Position numbers and translations under genes: made by a program. A DNA stretch of 64,000 nucleotides, from positions 310,001 through 374,000 of the forward strand of contig OZ251230.1 of assembly GCA_965240325.2 (NCBI GenBank), written 5' to 3'. Shown here in pieces: positions 9,709 through 53,035 of the stretch. This DNA is from Rebecca billardiae RCC1528. Taxonomy: Eukaryota; Protista; Haptophyta. The stretch's first letter is position 1. Every line of letters starts with the position of its first letter. A model generated the notes under the pieces. That model did no database searches. It saw only the letters and a list, made by a program, of their open reading frames with translations, and had not been told where the DNA came from.

Positions 9709-11277
9709 TCACTCGTCGTCATTGTCATACATCATCATCGCAGTCAAGGGCACGTCGCTCCCTGGTGGACGCCGGGCAAAGAGGGCGTGCTCGTACGCCT
9801 CCTCGCTGCCCAAGGGCGAGCCGTCATCGATGGCATCCAACAGCGCGCGCACGTGCTGTGCGCACCGCTCACGCTGGTTCGACTCCGACGGTAAGACGTG
9901 CAACCGCTGTTTGACTTCGAAGTGGCGAGTGTGGTCAGCCAGCGCCACGTCAAAGGTGAGCAGCAGCCCGCCGAGTGCAGGCGGCGCGATCCCGCGCATC
10001 TTCAACACGTCACTCAGCGCGGCGTGGTACTCGCCGACCCATCTGCGCGCGTCATGCTTCGACCTTCCCACCCATTCCGCGAGCAAGATAGCCAGGTCCT
10101 TTGCAGGCGGCCCTCGACCGATGTCGTCATAGTCGATCAGGCGCGCCGAGGGCAACGTACGCGCCGCTGCAGAGGCGGGACTATCGACGCTGCGAGCGGC
10201 GCGTGTGTCGTTGGGCACGGCGGGGGCGTGCGCGGCCTCCGAAGCACGACGGCCTCGCGCGCTGCCGGCGGGCGTGGGAGGATGAGGGCTGTCGTGGATC
10301 AGCATGTTCCCCCTGTGGGGGTCACCATGGATGAGGCACATCCACGGGCTGGCGTTCAGCCACCTCTCAAGGGCGCGTCCAGCAAGCGCGAGGCGCTGCC
10401 AAAGGCCCCCGTGTGCGTGCTTGCGGCGGAGTTTCGCGATGTCCACCTTGCCGAGGTCATCGTCCAGGTTGTACCAGCCGCCATGCACCTTGAGGCCCTT
10501 GAGCTCTGGCAGCGTGATGCCCCACGTCCAACCATGCAGGCGCGCGAGTGCGTGCAGCGCTGCGCGTTTGTTTGCGTGCGTCGGCTGCCCCGCGAGAGGC
10601 TTCCCCTGGACCACTTCCATGGCGACCAGCAGCCCTTCCGACGGCGTGTCGAGGACGAGCAGCGTGCGCGCTATCGGGACCGATGCCGGAGGCGCGATGA
10701 GCCGCGGCTGATGCCACTTCCACCAGCTGAGCACGATGCGGCCATGCCAGTCGTCAATCGCAACGCCGCCGGTGCCCTCGGCCTGCGAGGTATTCTGTGC
10801 CGTGCTTTGCAGACGGTAGATCTGCTTGACGATGATGCGACTCCCCACGCGATACACGTAGCGCATGTGTATGCCCTGTACGCGCTTGACCAACCGAATG
10901 CGCGGCATGCCGCCAGCTGCTGGCGCAAACCCGCGCCCGTGCTCGCGTTCGATGGCTGCGATCATGGACGCGACCGTCTGCTTGTTGAGCCGTGGTGGTG
11001 GCCTATCGCCCAGCTGCCGTCGCTCCAATCGGCGCTCACCAATGGCTCCGCTCGGCCTCGAGCGAGCTTGTCGGGCGACATCGCACGCGGCGGCGAGCAT
11101 CGCCCACCGCCACTGGCGCTCGCCGCACCGACTCGTGTTGAGGGCAGGAGCGATGGTGAGGCGAGCAGCCTCGATCATGGGCAGCAGAAAAACGCTCGCG
11201 ATCGAACGCGTCGCCACCGCCGCCGCGTGCGGCGGCAGCGCTGCGAGAGCCAGCACGACAGCCGCACGGACCATCAT
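9709..11277 (-). CDS. APH/choline/ecdysteroid-kinase-like phosphotransferase with signal peptide
   Basis: Catalytic loop LIHGDPHRGNMLI and LIDYDDIGRGPPAKDLA; N-terminus MMVRAAVVLALAAL. Confidence 0.72.
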   Translation of the reverse strand: MMVRAAVVLALAALPPHAAAVATRSIASVFLLPMIEAARLTIAPALNTSRCGERQWRWAMLAAACDVARQARSRPSGAIGERRLERRQLGDRPPPRLNKQTVASMIAAIEREHGRGFAPAAGGMPRIRLVKRVQGIHMRYVYRVGSRIIVKQIYRLQSTAQNTSQAEGTGGVAIDDWHGRIVLSWWKWHQPRLIAPPASVPIARTLLVLDTPSEGLLVAMEVVQGKPLAGQPTHANKRAALHALARLHGWTWGITLPELKGLKVHGGWYNLDDDLGKVDIAKLRRKHAHGGLWQRLALAGRALERWLNASPWMCLIHGDPHRGNMLIHDSPHPPTPAGSARGRRASEAAHAPAVPNDTRAARSVDSPASAAARTLPSARLIDYDDIGRGPPAKDLAILLAEWVGRSKHDARRWVGEYHAALSDVLKMRGIAPPALGGLLLTFDVALADHTRHFEVKQRLHVLPSESNQRERCAQHVRALLDAIDDGSPLGSEEAYEHALFARRPPGSDVPLTAMMMYDNDDE

Positions 11278-11282
11278 CACGT

Positions 11283-11338
11283 TCTCGCCTGCCTGAGCTG
11301 TGTGCACTGTGCGTCTCTTATTATTCTTAGTCAACTGT
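11283..11338 (+). repeat. Dispersed repeat family A copy
   Basis: TCTCGCCTGCCTGAGCTGTGTG(CACTGTG)CGTCTCTTATTATTCTTAGTCAACTGT. Confidence 0.8.
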
Positions 11339-11851
11339 ACCGGTAGTCTGTCCGGTTAAGACCCGGACTGCCACTGCCGCGTGCAAGCACTGCGGCCGCA
11401 GGGCGTCCGGCGAGACCCACTGAAGCCCCAGTGCGGCCCGAGGTCCTCGATGGCGGCTTTCGACGGCCGGCCCATCTGACCCACCGTGCGCCCACGGCCG
11501 GTGCCGGACCGTCGGGGGGCGTCACAGCCGCGGCGAGGTTCGTGTGGGCATGCCAACTACTCGGGCAAAGACTCCCCCGCCAGGTGCGTGTGCGTGGTGC
11601 GCGTGTTGTCCCATGCGCTCGTGCGGGCGGGCGCGTCCCATTTCGGCGAGGCGGGCAGATTGAGTGCTTGGTGTTCGCAAATGCGGCGATTTGCGGGCGT
11701 GCGATGGGTGTGGAGGGGAGCTATGTGATGCCCATATGCCAGGCCGCACGCGTCCGGACTGGGATTTTGTGGGATTGTCATGCCGCGTGCGTTTTGGGGC
11801 TCACGCATGCATTCCTGCACCCACGTGTGTGCCGCCCGCATTCGAGCGCGC

Positions 11852-12620
11852 AGGGACGGGCGCGAGGAAGCGGCGCATTGCTGCGCGCACGCCGGGCAAG
11901 GTTCTCACGCCAGCTGTTCCTCGGCCGCGCCTCGAGGGCGAGCTCCCTGACTCGCTCATCGGCAAATACTGGCGTGATGCCCACTTTGCCAACGGGACGG
12001 GCAATGACTACATGCACGGTGGCGCGCGCGCTCTGGCTGCTGCTCCGCTCATTCTGGCGCTCTATGCGCTGATGACGCTCTCGCAGGTCATTGACCTATT
12101 CGGCACGACCGTCGTTCACCCCCTCGTCAATGCCACGCGGCACCAGCGTAAGGAGGCTCGGCACGAGCGCCTGCTGCAAGCGCCTCCCGCGCGCGGAGAT
12201 CGAGTGCCCGAGTGGCGTCGCTACAGGCCCGCGTGGGTGGCGGAGACCGAGGATGAGCCCGACAGCCACGGGCTGTGGCCGATCACGCAGTGCCTACGCG
12301 ACCCCCTCTTCATCGCGGTCTTTGCCAAACACCCCATGGCGAGCGGCAGGCAGTGGCGGGCTAGGCATCAGCAGAATGGCGTCGCACGCGTCCCCGACCC
12401 GCTCAGGCTCAGCTGCCACAGCAGCAGCCTGCAGAGTGCAGGCCTGCAGCAGCATGACGTGGCCACACAAACACCGCCTCGACTTCTGAGGCGGTGTCAG
12501 CCAGGCCGAAGAGCCCTCCAGGTGGCCCATCAGGCATCAGCAGCGGCCGCAGGACCGGATCAGCGATGTGCTCAGCACGCTCGATCAGACCGTGAAGTGC
12601 CGCTAGCCCGTGGCCGCTGA
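11852..12620 (+). pseudogene. Unknown gene inside the TIR element, probably frameshifted
   Basis: Coding-like stretch LEGELPDSLIGKYWRDAHFANG...LWPITQCLRDPLFIAVFAKHP after a probable intron (about 11584..11851); no recognisable domain. Confidence 0.4.
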
Positions 12621-14229
12621 GACTGAGAGGGTCTGCCTCGCGTGGGGGGCCGCTGAAGTTGCCGCCCACGTACAGCATCTGCTCAGGCAGCCTGCGATCG
12701 GAAGCGGCATCCGAGACGTTGATCTTCATCAACTGCCTGATCAGGACCTTCTCGTCGGCAAAGCCTGGGCACCGTAGTCAGAATGAACTGCGGGTACGTC
12801 GCGCGCGTCTGGCCATGGCGGTGCAGTCGTGCGAGCGCCTGCTTGTCCGCAGCTGGGTTCGGGTGTGGGTCGAGGAGGATGAGGCGATTCGCAGCGACCA
12901 GGTTCAGACCAGCGCCACCAGCCTTCGTCGAGATGAAGAGGACGTGCGCCTTCGAGCCAAGGGCACAAAAGTCAGCGATGACCTTGGCCCTATCAGACTG
13001 CCTCACTGCGCCATGCAGCTCGACGATGCGCCAGCCGTCACGCCGCCAGCCGCCAGCGTACTCCTTCTCCAATGCCTTGCGGTAGAGCGACAGCACCTCC
13101 GTGTGCGCAGCGAACACGACGATCTTGTCGTCCGTGTGATCGAGCACCTCCGTCATCAAGCGCAGAAACACTCGCAGCTTGGTGGACGCAGCGTGCAGCT
13201 GGGACGAGTCCAGCCAATTCTGCTCGAGGTGGCGAGAGAGGGACTGGATCTTGGGCTCGAGACTGGTGCCGGCGAGGGCGGGGTGCGACGAGATGCCGAC
13301 CTGGATGCCCGACCGTGCGAGAGTGCGCACATCCCCGGCCGCTGCGATCGCCTCCGATAGCGCGTACTGCAGCTGGCTCGGCACGCAGCTCACAACATAG
13401 TCGTACCATGGCGGCAGCAGCTCTGTGACTGCCCTGCTCAGGATGTAGCGGTCGAGGAAGGTGCTCAGGGTCTCGCGGGCGAGCGGAGCGAGGAGAGCTT
13501 TGGCGCGGTCGCTGTCGGATGGATCTGCCCGCGCGAAGGCGTTGATGGGCCCCGCGACGAACTGCTCCCAGTACTGCTCCAGACAGCGGCGCCGGGGTCA
13601 GCCAGGTTGATGAGTGAGTAGAGGGCCTTCAGGTCGTTGCTGTCAGGCGTGGCCGTGAGCAGCAGCCGCTTAAGCGGCCAGAGCGAGTGCACGTAGGTCA
13701 CCAGCGCAGTATTGTCGTTGCAAAGCTCGTGCGCCTCGTCGAACACCCCGAGGTGGACGCGTGCTTCGCGGTGGGCCACAAAGAAGCCTGCATTCGAGGC
13801 AGAACGGAACTGGCCGTACGAGAGTACAAGCCAGTGCGCGCCCGTCATGAAGGCGGCGATGCTGTCGTCCGCTGACGGGACGACAACGCGCACATCTTGA
13901 TCGGGACAAATCCATCGCATGTCTCCTTCCCACTGCTTCACCAGCGTCGCCTTGGTGACGATGAGCACCCGCTCCGACCCCATCCGGTCGGCAACCATGG
14001 CTCCGACCGCGGTCTTGCCGTACCCCGTACCAGCGGCGACTATGAAGCCGTCGCGCAAGCGGAGGCGCCCAATGACGATGTCTACTACATCCTCCTGGTC
14101 TGCACGTGCCTCGAACGCAGGCCTTGGCGCTACATGAGGCGAGCGCGGCAGGGCGGGGCGGCAGAGCGCAGAGTGAGTAGACGTGGAAACGTAGGCCCCA
14201 CCGCGCGACGAGGAGAGGGTGCACGACAC
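12409..14229 (-). pseudogene. SNF2-family (Rad54-like) helicase/ATPase with frameshifts near 13585 and 12770
   Basis: Motif I GFIVAAGTGYGKT, II VFDEAH, III LLTATP, V STKAGGAGLNLVAANRLILLDP, VI QALARLHRHGQ, then ADEKVLIRQLMK; spread over three ORFs. Confidence 0.85.
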
Positions 14230-14433
14230 GCCCCACGCGCGGGATCACCTTGATAGGGGTTGGGCATCATGTCGAAGCCCTCAACACGGCCGAGTCGGCC
14301 CTCTCGTCGAGGCTCACCTGGGCTGCTGCCTCTCGCCGGACGGACTCGTCCCTCGCCCCATGGGAGAGGGGAGGGAGTCCGGGTCTCAACCGGACAGACC
14401 GGTAGTACGGTAGCTAACTCCTATGATACAAGT

Positions 14434-45970: not shown

Positions 45971-47520
45971 ATGGCGTCGGCGGGCCTGCGCGACGGCTCG
46001 GTCCCGCTCGGCGCGCGGCTCGAGCGGGCGGCGGAGCTTCTGGCGACCGGCGCGCTGCCCAACCGCGAGCGCCTCGTCTTCGACTGGCTCTGCGCCGAGC
46101 TGCGCCACGCGGGCAAGCCGCCCACGCCCACGCCGCGCGCGCCGGGCGGCTTGGCGCATGCGCACCCGGGCGCGTGGCGGCTGCTGAGCTCGCTGCTGGA
46201 CGACCCGCCCGTGCTCTCGCGGCTGCACGGCGCGGTGAGCGGCTCGACGCGGCTGCTCATGCTCGGCGCCAGCCGCGCGCTCGGCGACCCCGCCGCGCCG
46301 CCTCCGCCCGCGCCCGAGCTCATCCTCGCCGCGAACGGCGCGCTGGAGTCGCTGCTGGCGCGCTGCGCCGTCTCCTTCCGCCCGCCGGTCGACGCGCTCG
46401 TGGGGTACGCGGTGCGCGCGCTGGAGCTCGGGCGCGAGGCGCGGCTCGCCGCCGCGCACGCCGCCGCGCGCGCCGCCGAGCGCGCCGCGTGCACCGCGCT
46501 CGGCGCGCTGCTGAGGCTGTGCGCGCAGGCGGCGGCGCAGCGGCCCCTGTTTGTGTCGCTGGTCGGTCGGCTGCTCGCGCCGCTGCTCGGGCTGCTCGGC
46601 GAGGCGGCGGCGGCGGGCGGCGCGTCGGACGAGTGCGCGCTGCCGCCCGCGCTCGAGCGCGCCGTCGTCGCGCCGCGCTCGGCGCGCGCGGCGCCGCTTA
46701 GCGCGGCGCGGCCGCCCGCGCCGCAGCCCGCGCCGCCTGCGGCCGCCTCGCCGGCGCCGCCGCCGAGTCCCGGCGTGGGCGGCGTGGGCGCGGAGCTCGT
46801 GCAGCTGGCGCGCGCGCTGCTCGAGCTAGGGCTGTGCCACGACGACCACGCGCACGCGTACACGCTCGTCCTCGCGCCGGACGCCGCCGGGCCCGCCGCC
46901 GCCGCTCCGGCCGCCGCCGAGGCGTCCGACGCTGCCGCCACTGCCGCCACCGCCACGCCCGCGGCCGAGGGCGAGCGAGCGTCGAAGCGCGCGCGGCGCG
47001 CGGACGGCGCGCGCGGCGGCGCGCACGCGGACGGCGGCGCCGCCGCGCCGGTGTACGAGGCGCAGCTGCCGGACGCGCTGCGACGCGCCGCGGCCGCCGC
47101 GGCGGACAGCGCGCTGCGGCTGCCGAGCGCCGACGCGGCGGGCGCGACGGCTGCGGCCGAGGCGGCGGCGGGAGCGGAGGCGGAGGAGGCGTGGGCGCAG
47201 GGGCAGTTCGAGCGCTGCGCCGCCGCGTGCGCCGCCTCGCCGCTCGGCGGCTGCGCCGACCTCATCGCGTGCTTCACCGCGCTCGACGCGCGCGCGCGCG
47301 CCGCGGCGGCCGCGCGCCGCGCCGCTCGTGACGCGATGGGCGGCGGCGGCGGCGGCGGCGGCGGCGCGGCCGCCGCGCCCAAGCGGCGGCGGGCGGGCGC
47401 GAGCGCGGCGGGCGGGGCGACGGGCGCGGCGGGCGCGGAGCCCGCGCAGTCCTCGGCCGCGCACGGCGCGCTCGCGCTCGCGCTCACGCTGTGCGAGCAC
47501 ACGGCGGCGCGCGCGCTCGA

Positions 47521-47551
<31 letters not shown>

Positions 47552-49396
47552 CGCGGCGACCGCGGCGCGCGCGCCACCAGCCTCGCCGCGCACGCGCTGT
47601 GCGCCAGCGCGCTGCTCGCGGCGGCGCGCGCGCTCGCGTGCGCGCGGCACGGCGCGCGCCGCGCGTGGCACAGCGCGCCCACGCTGCTCGCGCACGGCGC
47701 CGCCGACGTCGTCGTCGCGGCCGGCGGCGGCGAGGGCGGCGCCGCCGCCGCGGCCACGCCGGCCACGCCGCTGCTGCCGCCGTGCGCCGCCTTCGAGCCC
47801 TTCGCGCCGGGCGCGCGCGCGCAGCTCGCGCGGCTCCGCGCGCACGCGCGCGCGATCGCCGCGGTCGCCGACGGCTGGGCGCGCGGCACCGGCGCGCGCG
47901 GCGGCGGCGGGTGCGGCGCGGCTCCGTGGTTGCCGCCGTGCGCGGCGCGCGCGCTCGCTAGCACGCTGTGCGCGCACGCGCACGCGCAGTCGCGGCTGCA
48001 CCCGTCACTGCTCGACGAGCACCTCGGCGCGTACTGCGCGCTGGTGGACGTGGGCGCGGTGTGCACCGCGGCGGGCGGAGCGGGCGGCGAAGCAGCGGGC
48101 GCGGAGCCGGACGTGACGAGTCCTCACGTGAGTACTCACGTGAGTACTGACGAGGGCGGCGAGGCGGTGGGCGGCCGTGCGCCGCGCGCGCCCGCCGCCG
48201 CCGAGCGCCCACCGCCGCGCCCGCCACCGCCCGCGGCGGGCGCGGCGGTGGCGCTCGGCGTCGAGCTGCTGCGCAACTTTGGCGCGCGCCGCCGGCTGCC
48301 GGAGCTCGTGGCCGCGCTGTGCGCCTCCGCGGCGCACAGCGCGGACGGCGCAGACGGCGACGCGGCCGACGCGGCGGCGCCCGGTGCGGCCGGCGGCCTG
48401 CAGGGCGCCGCCGCCGCCGCCGCCGCCGCCGCGGTGGAGAGCGAGCGCCTGTGGCCGTGCGGCTTCGGCTGGCTGCCAGCCGCGCTGACCGACGAGCTGC
48501 GCGCAGCGCCTCGCGCGCAGGTGGGCCCGCTGTGCGCGCACGCCGCGAGCGCGCTGCGTGCGGCGAACGCGCGCGCGGCGCTCGCTCTGGGGGGCGCGGA
48601 CGGCGGCGGGGACGGCGGCGGGGAGGCGCGTGGTGCGGAGGCGCATGCCGCGCTGTGCGCGTGCGCGCGCGTCGGCTTCATCGCCGCCGCGCTCGCCGAC
48701 GCCGCGCCGCTCGACGCGACGAACGCCGCCGCCGTCCGCCGCGCCGCCACCGAGCTGATGACCGCCCAGGCAGCCGCGGTGTGCGCGCTGGCGGGCTGGC
48801 TGCTCGGAGGCGGCGGGGGCGGGGCGGAGGCGGCGGCGGCGGCGGGGCCGGCGGAGGCAGCGGGCGGCTCGCGCCGCAAGCCGCGCCGCGCCGCGCACTC
48901 GCCCGCCGCGCGCGCGCGCGCGCGCTTGGACGCGTGCGCAGCCGCGCTCACGGCCGCGCTGCAGGCGTGGCGCGCGGCTCACGACTTGCGCGCAGCAGCC
49001 GATGCGATGGCGCCGCCGGCTGCGGTGCCGCGCGCAGGCGGCGGCGGCGCGGTGCCGCGCGGGGCGGCGCGCGCCCTCGTGCCGGACGCGGCGCTCGACG
49101 ACGCCCGCGCCGAGCTCTGGCCTGACGGGGCGGCGGTGGCGGCGGTGTGGGCGGCGGTGGCGGCGGACGCACCGCGCGACGGCGCACGCGGCGCGCGCTT
49201 GCATCGGCCGCCGTGCTCGGCTGCGCTGGCCGTCTCGTGCGTGCAGCTCGCCGCGCGGCGCGCGCACGCGGCGGACGTGGGCGCGGCGTGGGCGGCGGAT
49301 GTGGGCGCGCCGCCGCCGGAGGCCCCGCGCGCCGCCGCGCTGCTCGCACGCGCCGTGCTCGCGCCTGCCGCACTCGGGCTGGCGCGCGCGGCGGCG

Positions 49397-49452
<56 letters not shown>

Positions 49453-50644
49453 CTGGGAGTGCCGGCCGGTCGCGTGGCGGCGTGTCGTGCTCAGCATGCC
49501 GGCGGACGGCGGCGGTGGCGGGCCCTCGGCGCTGTCCGCGCTCGCGTGCGCCGACGCCGCGCTGTCGAGCGTGCGGCGCTGGGCGGCGCAGCTGCCGCCA
49601 CCGCCTCCGCCATCGGCCGAGCGCGCCGCGGCCGTTGGCGGCCATCACGACTCGAGTGTGCTGCGGCGCGTTGCGCGCGCGCTGTGCGAGGCCGCGACCG
49701 CCGAGCGCGCGCCGCCCGCCGGCGATGCCGACGAGGACGACGACGCCGCTGCCGCGTGGGCCGCCGCCCACGCCGACGGCGGCGCGCCCGAGCGCCGCGG
49801 CTGCGCGGCCGTGGACGCGCGCGCCGTCGCCCTGCAGGTGCTGGGCTGCGCGCCCAACATGAGGGGCGCACGCGCGGGCGGAGCGGGCGGCGGCGCGGGC
49901 GGTGGCGCGGGCGCGCCGAGCGCGCTCGCGCGAGCGCTGCCGCCCGCGCTGCTCGCGTGCGTCGGCGCGCGCGTCGGCGCCGCGCTCGCGCCCGCCGCCG
50001 ACGGCGGCGCCGCCGCGCGGCAAGCGGCGGGCGCGGGCGCGGCCGCGCTGGCGCGCGCGTACGCGCGCGCGCTCGCGCGCGCCGACGGCTGCGACGGCGG
50101 CGGCGGGGCGGGGGCGCAGCCGGCAGCCGGCGCGCCGCCAGCAGACGCCGCGCGCGCGGCACGCGACGCCCTGCGCGCGCGCGCCGAGCTGCTGCTCGCC
50201 GGGCTCGCGCAGCCCGCCCGTGCGCGCGCCCGCGCCGGGGGCGCCGCGCGGACCGAGGCGGCGGCGGCGCCGGCGCCGGCCACGCGGCGCTCGCGCGCCG
50301 CCGACGCCGACGCCGACGACGCCGATGCCGACGCCGACGGCGGCGGCGGCGGTGCGCTGGGGCGCGCGAGCGCGGCGGCGCTCGCGCGCGCGCTCGGCGG
50401 CGCGCCCGCGCTTGCGGCCGCGCGGCTGCTCGTGCGCGCGTGCGCACAGATTGAGGCGCCGACGCCGACGGCGCGCGGCGCGGCGCGCGCGGCGGCGCGT
50501 GCGGGCGCGTTAGCGGCTGCACCCGACGTCGCGCCCGCACGCGCCGCGGAGCACTCGGCGGGTGCGGCGGATGCGGTGGCGCACTGCGCCGCGCTTGCCG
50601 CGCTCGCGTGCGCCGCCCACGCCGCGCTCGCGCGCACGCCCGCG

Positions 50645-50681
<37 letters not shown>

Positions 50682-53035
50682 GAGCGCGCGCCGCGCGCGT
50701 GTGGACGCGCGCGCTTGCTCAGCTCGCGTGCGCGCTGCCGAGCGCGAGCGCGGCCGCGCTTGGCGAGGCCGCCACGGCGGCGTGGGCGCGCGCGGCGATG
50801 GCGCACGGCTCGCTCGCGACGGATGAGGCAGCGGCCGCTCTCGCCTGGGTGGGCGGGCGCGCGCTCGGCAGCGCAGCCGCCCCCGGCCGCGCGGGCGGCG
50901 CGGGCGGCGCCGCTCCGAGCGCCGCTGGCCGCGCCGAGGCCGACGGCGGCGGCGACGACGACGACGACGCGGGCGCCCAGGCCGGGGCGGCGGAGATCGC
51001 GCGCGGCGCGCTCGGTGGGCTGCGCGCGTGCGCGCCGGGCCAGCCGCGCCGCGCGCGCGCCCTCGCGGTGTGCGCCGCCGTGCTCGATGGCGCAGCGGAC
51101 GGCGTGGCCGCGGCCGCGGCGGCTGGCGACGGCGCGGCCGCGGCCACGGCGCGCGCGCGCTCGAGCTGCGACCTTCTTGCGTCCGAGCTGGCGGCGGCGG
51201 CGCTCGCCGAGGTGGAGGCGGCGGAGCGCGGCGTCGGCGGCAGTGCGGCACCGGCGCAGCGCCGCGCCGCGCTGCTGCACGCTGGCGCGGCCGCGCTGCG
51301 CGCACTCGCCCAGGGCTGGCTGGGCCCACCCGCTGCGGCCGCGCCGCGCGACGCCGCGGCCGCGAGCGACCACGGCGGCGCGGACGGCGGCGCGGACGGC
51401 GCCGAGCGCGCCCTCGCCCGCGCCATCCCCCGGCTGCTGGACGTGGCGCAGGCTGAGCTCGGCGCCGAGCTTGCCACGCTCGCGCCAGCGCCGGGCGCCG
51501 AGCGCGCCGCGGCTGCGGACGGCGCGGCTGCGGCGGGCGGCGCAGACCGGTGCGGCGCGGAAGGTGCGGCGCTCAGCCTCTGGCTCCAGCTGTGCGCTGC
51601 GCTGCCGCACGTGCGGCCGCCGCCGCCGCCGCGCGTGTGCGTGCAGCTGCTGAGCACGCCGCTGCAGCTGCTCGCGCGCACGCACGCGGCCGCCGACGAG
51701 GGCGCCGACGGCGCCGCCGACGCGGCCGGCGGCACGCAAGACGCGCGCGCGCGCGGAGGGCTCGGCGCGCCACCGCCTGCGGAGGCGCGCGGCGCGCTGG
51801 CGGCCGGCCCGGCGCGCTGGTGGGCGCAGCACGCGGCGGCGGGGCCTGGCGACGAGCCCGCCTCGCCGGGCGGCGCTCGCGACGTCCAACACCGCGCCGC
51901 GCACGCGGCGCGCGCGCACGCGCTGCGGCGGGGCGCGCGGCTGTGCGTGCAGGCGCTGCTCGCGCCGCCGCCCGCTGCGCCCGCGGCCGCGGGCGCGCGC
52001 GAGGCCGGCGGCGGCGCCGCCGATGGCGCCGACGACCCTCGGGGCGGGGCGGCGGCCGCCACGCTCGCGGCCGCGCCGCACGCCGCGGGCCTGCCCGGGC
52101 CGCTCTTCGGCGCGTGCGTGCGCGCGCTGCTCGGCGCGTGCGAGACGCTGGCCGCGCGCTGCGCCGACGCGCGCGCCGAGCCGGCCGCGCGCGCCGCGCG
52201 CGCCGACGCCGACGGCGCGGGCGGCGCGTCGGCCTCAGGCGCTCGCGCGCGCGCGGCGTGTGCGGCGGCGGGCAGCGCGGGCTCGGAGGCGGAGGCGTGC
52301 CTCGGCGCGTGCCTCGATGCGCTCGCGCTCTGCGCCGCCGCGCGCTCGCGCTCGCACCTCGACGAGCTCTCCGACGCGCGCGGCGCGGCGTGCGCGGCGC
52401 TGCTGCACGCGTGCGCGGGCGCTCAGAGCGGCCGCGCACTGTGCGCCGCGGCGTGGGCCGCGCACGCGCTCGCGTCGAACGGCGGGCTGGCGCTGAGCAC
52501 AGAGGACGCGACGACGCTCGTGCACGCGCTCGTCGCGTGCATGGAGCGCGCGCTCTCGCGCGCGCGCCCCCTCGCCCCCGCCGCGGCCGCGGCCGCCGTG
52601 CTGAGCGCCGGCCGCGCGGCGGAGGTGCTCGCGCGCGCGAGGGCGCCCGCGCTGCGGCACTGCGGCGCCGCGGTGCTGTCGCTCTGGCAGGCGGCGCTGC
52701 GCCCGCTGCTGCTGCCGCCGCGCCTGCCGCACGGCGCGACGCTCGACGCGGCGCGCTCGCTCGCCCGCCTCTACCAGCTCGCCGCGCGCGAGCGCGCCGC
52801 CTTCCGCCGCCACGGCGCGTACGCGCTCGCCGAGTACGTGAGCGCGCGCGCGCGCGGACTGCTGTGCGCGGGCGTGGAGGAGGAGCTGCTGCCGGGCGTG
52901 CACGCGCTCATCTCGGCGTGCGACGAGCCGCAGCTCAACCACCTGTTCGGCGCGCTCGACGATGCCGGCCGCGACGCGTTCCGCGAGGCGCACGAGGCGT
53001 ACAAGCGCGAGTTCAGGTTTGGCGGCACCGTCTGA
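45971..53035 (+). CDS. URB2: Nucleolar pre-ribosomal protein URB2/Npa2, extremely Ala/Gly-rich
   Basis: N-terminal LPNRERLVFDWL; C-terminal Urb2-type block AFRRHGAYALAEYV...LLPGVHALISACD...LDDAGRDAFREAHEAYKREFRFGG. Confidence 0.8.
49398..49450 (+). repeat. (GGC)n polyglycine tract
   Basis: Seen directly. Confidence 0.9.

What the first reader, a model, noticed from the sequence alone, without database searches (positions are those of the whole stretch)
11341..14404. TIR/TSD-bounded element carrying a Rad54-like SNF2 helicase: candidate undescribed transposon type
Seen: 24-bp TIRs (23/24) and a 5-bp direct duplication CGGTA enclose an SNF2 ATPase (motifs I-VI, two frameshifts) and a convergent gene with no recognisable domain. 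An alternative parse gives a TAGTCTG left end with CCGG flanks, like Academ termini. Known: helicase-encoding TIR elements (AcademH, KolobokH) carry RecQ-type helicases; I do not recall a TIR superfamily defined by an SNF2 gene. Inference: this is a decayed member of a family that carries its own chromatin remodeller, and the unknown ORF may be a divergent transposase or accessory protein. No DDE triad is visible here.
Basis: partly seen in the sequence, partly recalled or inferred. Interest (0 to 1): 0.8.

Follow-up and report, generated by a model that had tools for sequence, protein, structure and literature searches.

The report
Decayed transposon carrying own SNF2 motor
This is a real but broken 3-kb cut-and-paste jumping gene of a very GC-rich alga; intact relatives from environmental DNA show that its family regularly carries its own Rad54-like SNF2 motor protein beside a large, unclassified putative transposase, a rarely reported arrangement.

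Summary
The element is real, but its ends were misread. It spans window 11348-14397 (3,050 bp), has 25-nt inverted ends starting CTGTCCGGTT, and duplicates 9 bp of target (ACCGGTAGT), not 5 bp.

The 72-Mb genome holds a 100% identical copy, two deleted copies (about 95% identical in the shared blocks), four ~105-bp miniature copies, one solo end and three old fragments. All eight complete copies have a different 9-bp duplication (one may be 10 bp).

The minus strand carries a full-length (~606 codon) Rad54-like SNF2 gene broken by two 1-bp frameshifts. The sister lineage has different lesions, so their ancestor was intact. It is not a captured host gene: the nearest host gene (RAD54) is only 43-44% identical.

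Metagenome contigs hold relatives with the same end sequence. One is a 7,733-bp element, identical in two contexts. It has an intact 610-aa SNF2 gene convergent with about 1,600 codons of ORFs, including a DUF6589-like protein, the probable transposase. These SNF2s form a clade apart from RAD54.

The plus-strand ORF is unconstrained, perhaps a stub of the transposase gene. No autonomous copy was found in this genome, and the superfamily is unresolved.

First readers of this scan had already flagged the two deleted sister copies on other contigs.

The parts
11339..11347 (.). left copy of the 9-bp target-site duplication (ACCGGTAGT)
   Evidence: it is identical to 14398-14406. All eight complete copies have their own duplication of 9 bp (one may be 10 bp).
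11348..11372 (+). left terminal inverted repeat, starting CTGTCCGGTT
   Evidence: The first 10 nt are identical at the ends of metagenome elements L079 and L080/L081.
11398..11410 (+). subterminal motif GCAGGGCGTCCGG about 50 nt inside the end; possible second transposase-binding site (inferred)
   Evidence: the core GCGTCCGG lies at the same distance from the end in L079, at both ends of L080 and in the C15 solo end. The window's own right end has a one-base variant.
11664..12620 (+). 318-codon ORF without homologues. Only about 11900-12360 has coding-like codon composition. Residues 125-222 (12036-12329) weakly resemble the N-terminus of the first large ORF of the full-length relative. Probably a 5' stub of the lost transposase gene.
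   Evidence: no family and no homologue; dN/dS about 1.3 between lineages. GC by codon position; 27% identity over 101 aligned positions to residues 13-105 of L080:670-3264, E 0.004.
13585..14229 (-). SNF2 pseudogene, piece 1: N-terminal lobe (motifs I, Ia, II DEAH, III TATP); start codon 168 bp inside the right end
   Evidence: SNF2-rel_dom 4.8e-12; 43% identity to the L080 SNF2, E 1e-32; 40% to P0002.
13579..13585 (-). frameshift 1: one base missing relative to the sister lineage (C19/C18b)
   Evidence: in C19/C18b the frame runs through this point. The site is not a homopolymer, so an assembly error is unlikely.
12776..13579 (-). SNF2 pseudogene, piece 2: inter-lobe region and C-terminal lobe (motifs IV-VI)
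   Evidence: Helicase_C 1e-16; best solved structure is zebrafish Rad54 (1z3i), 4e-18; 33% identity to P0002 and to the L080 SNF2, E 6e-34 and 1e-32.
12766..12775 (-). frameshift 2, between motif VI and the conserved C-terminal tail
   Evidence: the tail continues in another frame, colinear with the L079 and L080 SNF2 proteins.
12409..12765 (-). SNF2 pseudogene, piece 3: C-terminal tail and stop codon (12409-12411)
   Evidence: tblastn of L080 SNF2 residues 491-586 to 12765-12478, E 0.007; shared tail motifs.
14332..14343 (-). right-end counterpart of the subterminal motif (CGTCCGGCGAGA)
   Evidence: the two ends printed side by side.
14373..14397 (-). right terminal inverted repeat
14398..14406 (.). 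right copy of the 9-bp target-site duplication

Best explanation
Window 11348-14397 is a non-autonomous internal-deletion derivative of a cut-and-paste TIR transposon family. Full-length members carry, between ~25-nt ends that start CTGTCCGGTT, a large putative transposase region (about 1,600 codons in three ORFs, the last DUF6589-like with a C-terminal Cys/His finger). Convergent with it, and starting about 150 bp inside the other end, is a dedicated ~600-aa Rad54-like SNF2 ATPase.

Shown. The ends and the 9-bp target duplications. Recent mobility: two 100% identical copies at different sites. The colinear but twice-frameshifted SNF2. Independent decay in two lineages. Relatives with the same end sequence and gene order. 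A separate SNF2 clade.

Inferred. The transposase binds the terminal repeat and the subterminal GCGTCCGG motif, and cuts the target with a 9-bp stagger. This copy kept both ends, a short 5' stub of the transposase gene and the SNF2 gene, and is moved in trans. In intact elements the SNF2 motor helps transposition, most plausibly in one of two ways: it promotes Rad51/Rad54-type homologous repair of the excision gap, which restores the donor copy, or it opens chromatin at donor or target sites. In this genome the SNF2 gene is dead in every copy and is not needed for movement.
For: Ends and duplications. Eight complete copies each have their own 9-bp duplication. C13 and C16 are 100% identical over exactly 3,050 bp and their flanks are unrelated.

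Decay. C13/C16 have two 1-bp frameshifts. C19/C18b have other lesions: a 208-bp deletion, a 27-bp deletion, small insertions, and the 3' end including motif VI replaced.

No host parent. The best non-element match in the genome is RAD54 on contig 34, at 43-44% identity.

No close relative in databases. Among 1.84 billion representative proteins no hit reached E 1e-30.

Relatives. P0002 matches at 40% and 33% identity (E 2e-24 and 6e-34) and the L080 SNF2 at 43% and 33%. The window's three pieces tile both proteins colinearly.

Same ends and gene order. L079 has the same 10-nt terminus upstream of its SNF2 gene and a convergent ORF of at least 536 aa. L080 and L081 are identical over exactly 7,733 bp bounded by inverted CTGTCCGGTT / CTGTCCGATT ends, with unrelated flanks. 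L085 has an SNF2 gene plus a convergent ORF homologous to the P0160 C-terminal part (hhalign 94%).

Transposase candidate. Pfam gives DUF6589 at 24-26 bits against a cut-off of 27. In a language-model search, 20 of 30 hits were DUF6589 clusters.

Tree. The element SNF2s form a clade (SH-aLRT 97) apart from host RAD54.
Against: No transposase homologue and no full-length partner were found in this genome, although transposition was very recent.

Neither full-length metagenome contig shows a matching duplication. Assembly across several copies could explain this.

The catalytic nature of the ORF864/ORF172/P0160 region is not shown. It matches no transposase family in Pfam, no solved structure by sequence, and both AlphaFold models failed.

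The SNF2 role is pure inference. Elements with a dead SNF2 gene still moved.

dN/dS on the SNF2 gene between the two lineages is about 0.8, from only 13 substitutions, so recent constraint is not shown. The tree is a quick search on compositionally biased sequences.
Confidence: 0.78

Rival explanations
1. Pack-MULE-type capture. A non-autonomous Mutator-like element (9-bp duplication) picked up a host SNF2 gene as passive cargo, and the gene has nothing to do with the family's biology.
For: The 9-bp duplication is typical of Mutator-like elements (own knowledge). The genome holds MULE transposases, and other readers of this scan reported giant MULEs. Copies with a dead SNF2 gene still transposed. 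dN/dS is not distinguishable from 1.
Against: No host parent exists in this genome; the nearest gene is 43-44% identical. The whole gene is carried, not a fragment. SNF2 proteins 33-48% identical to each other sit at the same position, in the same orientation, beside the same partner gene and inside the same terminal sequence in at least three other lineages, and they form their own clade. The full-length relative has no MULE domain.
Confidence: 0.1
2. The full-length relatives are not transposase-bearing transposons. They would be another kind of mobile or viral island, with the SNF2 protein and the DUF6589-like protein serving replication or defence, and an unrelated transposase moving everything in trans.
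For: No catalytic DDE triad or transposase family was demonstrated in ORF864, ORF172 or P0160. Both structure predictions were uninformative. This genome moves the 3-kb element without any detectable homologue of those ORFs.
Against: Short TIRs, fixed-length target duplications and miniature derivatives are the signature of DDE cut-and-paste elements. DUF6589-like proteins occur as multi-member clusters of hypothetical proteins across cnidarians, chordates, molluscs and fungi, as expected of transposon proteins. No relative was found in the viral collection.
Confidence: 0.1
3. The element is an artefact: a segmental duplication or assembly repeat rather than a transposon.
For: None beyond the presence of identical copies.
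Against: Identity between copies stops exactly at the inverted ends. Each copy has a different 9-bp direct duplication. Four ~105-bp derivatives consist of the two ends alone.
Confidence: 0.01

Closest known systems
Mutator-like elements (MULEs), including Pack-MULEs
   Same: 9-bp target duplication. Non-autonomous derivatives that carry a gene between the ends. Miniature derivatives. A large multi-domain putative transposase in full-length relatives.
   Different: No MULE or Transposase_mut domain in the full-length relative. TIRs are only about 25 nt. The carried gene is a complete, family-conserved SNF2 gene, not a captured host fragment.
Fungal Intons and Entons (IS3EU- and EnSpm-derived complex transposons said to encode an SNF2 helicase; PMC3627910 citing the meeting report PMC3520738)
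   Same: TIR DNA transposons that carry an SNF2 helicase as a conserved non-transposase gene alongside several other ORFs.
   Different: They are fungal and derive from superfamilies that give 6-bp and 3-bp duplications (own knowledge), whereas this family gives 9 bp. No integrase-like or EnSpm-type domain was detected here.
AcademH / KolobokH
   Same: A TIR transposon with its own superfamily-2 helicase as accessory gene.
   Different: Here the gene is an SNF2/Rad54-like ATPase and the duplication is 9 bp. The proposed Academ-like end parse fails.
Eukaryotic RAD54 (Rad54-like SNF2 subfamily)
   Same: It is the best solved-structure match (1z3i, 4e-18) and the best named database hits are RAD54-like. 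Helicase motifs I-VI are present.
   Different: Identity is only about 30-44%. The protein is a minimal core of about 600 aa without the Rad54 N-terminal domain. It has its own conserved tail. It lies in a separate clade from the host RAD54 of the same genome.
KDZ (Kyakuja-Dileera-Zisupton) giant transposons
   Same: Large TIR elements with several ORFs and a Cys-rich finger in the transposase (PMC11343200).
   Different: KDZ elements give 8-bp duplications and carry PF18758 plus CxC domains (PMC11343200). None of these was detected here.

Membership tests
Cut-and-paste TIR DNA transposon (class II, subclass 1) | Terminal inverted repeats at both ends | tested here: met
   25-27 nt, 93% complementary, 0 expected by chance. 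The same ends are found in all copies.
Cut-and-paste TIR DNA transposon (class II, subclass 1) | Target-site duplication of fixed length, different at each insertion | tested here: met
   9 bp in 8 of 8 complete copies, one readable as 10 bp.
Cut-and-paste TIR DNA transposon (class II, subclass 1) | Encodes a DDE-type transposase (autonomous members) | tested here: inconclusive
   The window copy has none. Full-length relatives have about 1,600 codons of ORFs with only a sub-threshold DUF6589 match. Structure prediction failed.
Mutator / MULE superfamily | 9-11-bp target duplication | tested here: met
Mutator / MULE superfamily | MULE/MuDR-type transposase domain (PF10551 or PF00872) | tested here: not met
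   No match in ORF864, ORF172 or P0160, including E thresholds of 0.1 to 10. In this genome PF10551 matches only two unrelated places.
Pack-MULE | Cargo is a fragment captured from an identifiable host gene | tested here: not met
   The gene is full length. There is no host parent above 44% identity. The gene is conserved at the same position in distant relatives.
   The duplication is 9 bp, and the bases outside 11348 and 14397 differ in every copy.
Inton / Enton (SNF2-carrying fungal transposons) | IS3EU- or EnSpm-type transposase and 6-bp or 3-bp duplication | tested here: not met
   The duplication is 9 bp and Pfam finds no integrase-like or EnSpm-type domain.
SNF2 family ATPase, Rad54-like | SNF2 N-lobe and helicase C-lobe with motifs I-VI | tested here: met
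   PF00176 4.8e-12 and PF00271 1e-16. Motifs are visible in alignment A2. In this copy the gene is broken by two frameshifts.
SNF2 family ATPase, Rad54-like | Groups with canonical RAD54 in a tree | tested here: not met
   It falls in a separate clade of element-borne SNF2s (SH-aLRT 97). Host RAD54 sits among canonical RAD54-like proteins.

The most novel reading that the evidence does not exclude
The CTGTCCGGTT elements represent an undescribed lineage, possibly a new superfamily, of eukaryotic cut-and-paste transposons. Their transposase would be of the unstudied DUF6589 type. Their autonomous members would always encode a dedicated Rad54-like SNF2 motor that takes part in transposition, for example by steering repair of the excision gap or by opening chromatin.
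Probability: 0.3. Interest if true: 0.8.

Novelty: new variant of a known kind. Interest (0 to 1): 0.6.

Why it matters
Cut-and-paste transposons normally encode one or two proteins. Conserved accessory motors are rare, and their roles are untested.

This family offers a clean case. It has sharply defined ends and a fixed 9-bp duplication. A 7.7-kb intact copy lies in two contexts in environmental DNA. A compact SNF2/Rad54-like ATPase has been kept at the same place across lineages whose proteins are only 33-48% identical.

It makes two questions testable. Does a transposon-encoded remodeller or recombination motor raise transposition or donor-site restoration? And is DUF6589, a domain of unknown function spread over animals and fungi, part of a transposase?

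For this genome's annotation the practical result is simpler. The SNF2 and the plus-strand ORF at 11.3-14.4 kb are transposon pseudogenes, not host genes.

Tried and rejected
**Rejected readings**
- A 5-bp duplication and Academ-like ends are rejected by comparison of copies.
- A recent capture of a host gene is rejected.

**Searches that found nothing**
- Word search of the SNF2 C-lobe piece and of the plus-strand ORF.
- Both JGI metagenome scans, one with the transposase-like alignment and one with the SNF2 alignment. They gave nothing, or only 28%-identical unrelated SNF2s.
- Viral collection: no relative.
- Search of this genome for a partner, using the L079 ORF, Pfam DUF6589, the A1 profile, ORF864 and a relaxed end pattern. 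PF10551 gave two unrelated places.

**Structure and sequence-to-structure searches**
- AlphaFold on ORF864 alone and on P0160 with three sequences gave pLDDT 36 and 38. Both were unusable, so no fold search was run.
- PDB sequence searches of ORF864 and of the P0160 profile gave no meaningful hit.
- The first language-model search, on the L079 ORF, was uninformative.

**Steps I could not take**
I could therefore not read the ends of the giant MULEs or the MULE loci.
All searches, alignments and folds used the pieces separately, by reference.

**Literature**
- Searches for SNF2 with IS3EU, with haptophyte transposons, and for DUF6589 gave only the Inton/Enton mention and nothing on this family. 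The KDZ paper was read and found not relevant beyond the 8-bp duplication.
Full report
**1. The observation**

The region holds an inverted repeat at 11346-11372 and 14373-14399 (27 nt, 93% complementary). Its 24-mer occurs nowhere else in the window, and none is expected in 100 shuffles. On the minus strand, Pfam finds an SNF2-related domain (13465-14229, 4.8e-12) and a helicase C domain (12683-13393, 1e-16). The plus-strand ORF 11664-12620 matches nothing.

The window is contig 13, 310001-374000, of a 72-Mb, 41-contig genome with 60-86% G+C. Other agents of this scan call it a haptophyte alga. I did not verify that.

**2. True ends and target duplication**

A pattern search and a DNA search of the whole genome found the following family members:
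- a second copy on contig 16, 100% identical over 3,050 bp;
- two deleted copies, on contig 19 (2,645 bp) and contig 18 (3,534 bp);
- four miniature copies of 102-113 bp made of the two ends only (contigs 10, 12, 17, 18);
- one solo end (contig 15);
- three old fragments at 69-86% identity (contigs 7, 14, 32).

Printing the junctions shows that similarity between copies begins at window 11348 (CTGTCC...) and stops at 14397 (...GGACAG). Every complete copy is flanked by its own direct duplication of 9 bp. In the window this is ACCGGTAGT. One copy can be read as 10 bp, and one has a 4-bp insertion in its end. The Academ-like parse fails because the bases outside 11348 and 14397 differ in every copy.

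Identity between the contig 13 and contig 16 copies ends exactly at the repeats. They are therefore products of very recent transposition, not of segmental duplication.

**3. The SNF2 gene**

Three minus-strand pieces tile the full length of intact relatives colinearly (alignment A2; tblastn):
- 14229-13585, N-terminal lobe;
- 13579-12776, inter-lobe region and C-terminal lobe;
- 12765-12412, tail, followed by the stop codon at 12409-12411.

This is a complete gene of about 606 codons, broken only by two 1-bp frameshifts. The first is a missing base relative to the sister lineage, in which the frame runs through. Neither site is a homopolymer, so they are probably real mutations.

The contig 19 and contig 18 copies have different lesions: a 208-bp deletion inside the gene, a 27-bp deletion, small insertions, and replacement of the 3' end, including motif VI, by 313 bp of unrelated DNA. 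The lesions are independent, so the common ancestor carried an intact gene. Both lineages also moved after the gene had died. The SNF2 protein is therefore not needed in cis.

Between the lineages dN/dS is about 0.8 for the SNF2 gene, from only 13 substitutions. That is uninformative, though it fits pseudogenes.

**4. Not a host capture**

In the whole genome the only matches above 60% identity are the family's own copies and fragments. The best other match is the intron-containing host RAD54 gene on contig 34, at 43-44% identity. The best solved structure is zebrafish Rad54 (4e-18 for the C lobe, only 1e-4 for the N lobe).

The word search found nothing in the allowed length range. I therefore ran the exhaustive search with the 304-codon open stretch 12686-13597. 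None of 1.84 billion representatives reached 1e-30. The best was 8e-25, and the best hits that carry a name are RAD54-like proteins of animals and metagenomes.

**5. Relatives with the same ends**

One hit, P0002 (538 aa, metagenome), is a true relative in both lobes (40% identity, 2e-24; 33%, 6e-34). Its contig L079 (4.2 kb, about 69% G+C) has three matching features:
- the sequence CTGTCCGGTT, followed by a similar repeat, 300 bp upstream of an intact 554-aa SNF2 gene;
- the motif GCGTCCGG about 50 nt further in, as in the window;
- a convergent ORF of at least 536 aa downstream.

That ORF has one database relative, P0160 (45% identity). P0160 lies on 8.1-kb contigs L080 and L081. These two contigs are 100% identical over exactly 7,733 bp and unrelated outside it. 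The shared block begins CTGTCCGGTT and ends with the inverted CTGTCCGATT (22 of 25 TIR positions match).

Inside the block lie ORFs of 864, 172 and 590 aa on one strand. The last is P0160. On the other strand is an intact 610-aa SNF2 gene whose start is 144 bp from the end. In the window the corresponding distance is 168 bp. This SNF2 is 43% (N lobe) and 33% (C lobe) identical to the window's.

Neither contig shows a matching duplication. With identical copies in several contexts, a metagenome assembler may have joined flanks of different copies, but this remains unexplained.

A further relative, L085, has an SNF2 gene (P0102) convergent with an ORF homologous to the C-terminal part of P0160 (hhalign 94%, 1e-7). 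L084 (P0025) is cut just after the SNF2 gene.

In a quick maximum-likelihood tree of 103 C-lobe regions, the window, L079, L080, P0006, P0025 and P0102 form one clade (SH-aLRT 97). The host RAD54 sits among canonical RAD54-like proteins. Caveats are the quick search, the LG+G4 model and the biased composition of these rows.

**6. The putative transposase**

P0160 and its L079 homologue give sub-threshold matches to Pfam DUF6589 (24-26 bits against a cut-off of 27). In a language-model search, 20 of 30 nearest clusters are DUF6589 families of cnidarians, chordates, molluscs and fungi. That is the kind of multi-member family of hypothetical proteins expected of transposon genes.

No Pfam transposase family matches ORF864, ORF172 or P0160. 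There is no PDB sequence match. Both AlphaFold models were unusable.

Candidate acidic motifs can be seen by eye in ORF864 and P0160, but that is inference only. The superfamily is unresolved. The 9-bp duplication is Mutator-like, but the defining MULE domain was tested and not found.

**7. The plus-strand ORF**

It has no homologue. Its dN/dS between lineages is about 1.3. Only 11900-12360 has coding-like codon composition.

Residues 125-222 align weakly (27%, E 0.004, pairwise only) with residues 13-105 of ORF864. That is the position expected if the 3-kb element arose by an internal deletion from just inside the transposase gene to just beyond the SNF2 stop codon. I regard it as a probable 5' stub of the transposase gene, not as a functional protein.

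**8. No partner in this genome**

I searched with the L079 ORF, DUF6589, the P0160 profile, ORF864 and a relaxed end pattern. None found a full-length element or a transposase homologue. What moved the contig 13 and contig 16 copies is unknown. The source may be unassembled, lost or too diverged.

**9. Known precedents and novelty**

Bao and Jurka (PMC3627910) state that the fungal Inton and Enton transposons carry an SNF2 helicase. They cite a talk summarised in PMC3520738, which describes these as derived from IS3EU and En/Spm ancestors with five to six proteins. So an SNF2 gene in a TIR transposon is not unprecedented.

I found nothing on such elements in algae, on a 9-bp duplication family with this gene, or on DUF6589 as a transposase. 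First readers of this scan had flagged the contig 19 and contig 18 copies, and I confirmed their 9-bp duplications. I rate the family a new variant of a known kind. The window copy itself is a dead, non-autonomous member.

**10. Limits**

Noticed in passing
G000 contig 18, 1780321-1781205 (held in L031/L021); inside the sister copy of this element: The 3,534-bp sister copy carries a nested 885-bp insertion. The insertion has its own ~20-nt imperfect inverted ends (CTTGTCCCCTACACCCCTGG...), an 8-bp duplication (GCCGCAGG) and a poly-G tract. It is another non-coding TIR element, hAT-like by duplication length.
   Followed up: partly
window 46000-53000: A 7-kb stretch has 82-86% G+C. It contains (GCG)n, (GCGCGC)n and 12-69-nt GC-only tandem arrays.
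   Followed up: partly
window 9709-11334 (minus strand): A 541-codon ORF with an APH/phosphotransferase domain (5.4e-8) starts 14 bp from the transposon's left end. The element therefore sits in the short AT-richer spacer directly upstream of this gene and could affect its promoter.
   Followed up: no
G000, many places, e.g. contig 1 2272783 and 2276734, contig 7 257884 and 262101: The 18-mer CTTTCCGCTTGGTACCCG recurs as same-strand pairs about 4 kb apart on several contigs. This looks like the two long terminal repeats of an LTR element family.
   Followed up: no
window element 11348-12357 versus 12838-14397, compared with the contig 19 copy: The left kilobase differs from the sister lineage by about 4.5% substitutions, many of them G-to-A or C-to-T. 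The SNF2 part differs by only about 1.3%. This fourfold difference is unexplained. Recombination between copies or local deamination are possibilities.
   Followed up: partly
L080 7806-7845 (right flank of the metagenome element): Directly outside the right end lies a short hairpin (CTCTGT ... ACAGAG). Neither L080 nor L081 shows a target duplication, although the element is identical in both.
   Followed up: partly
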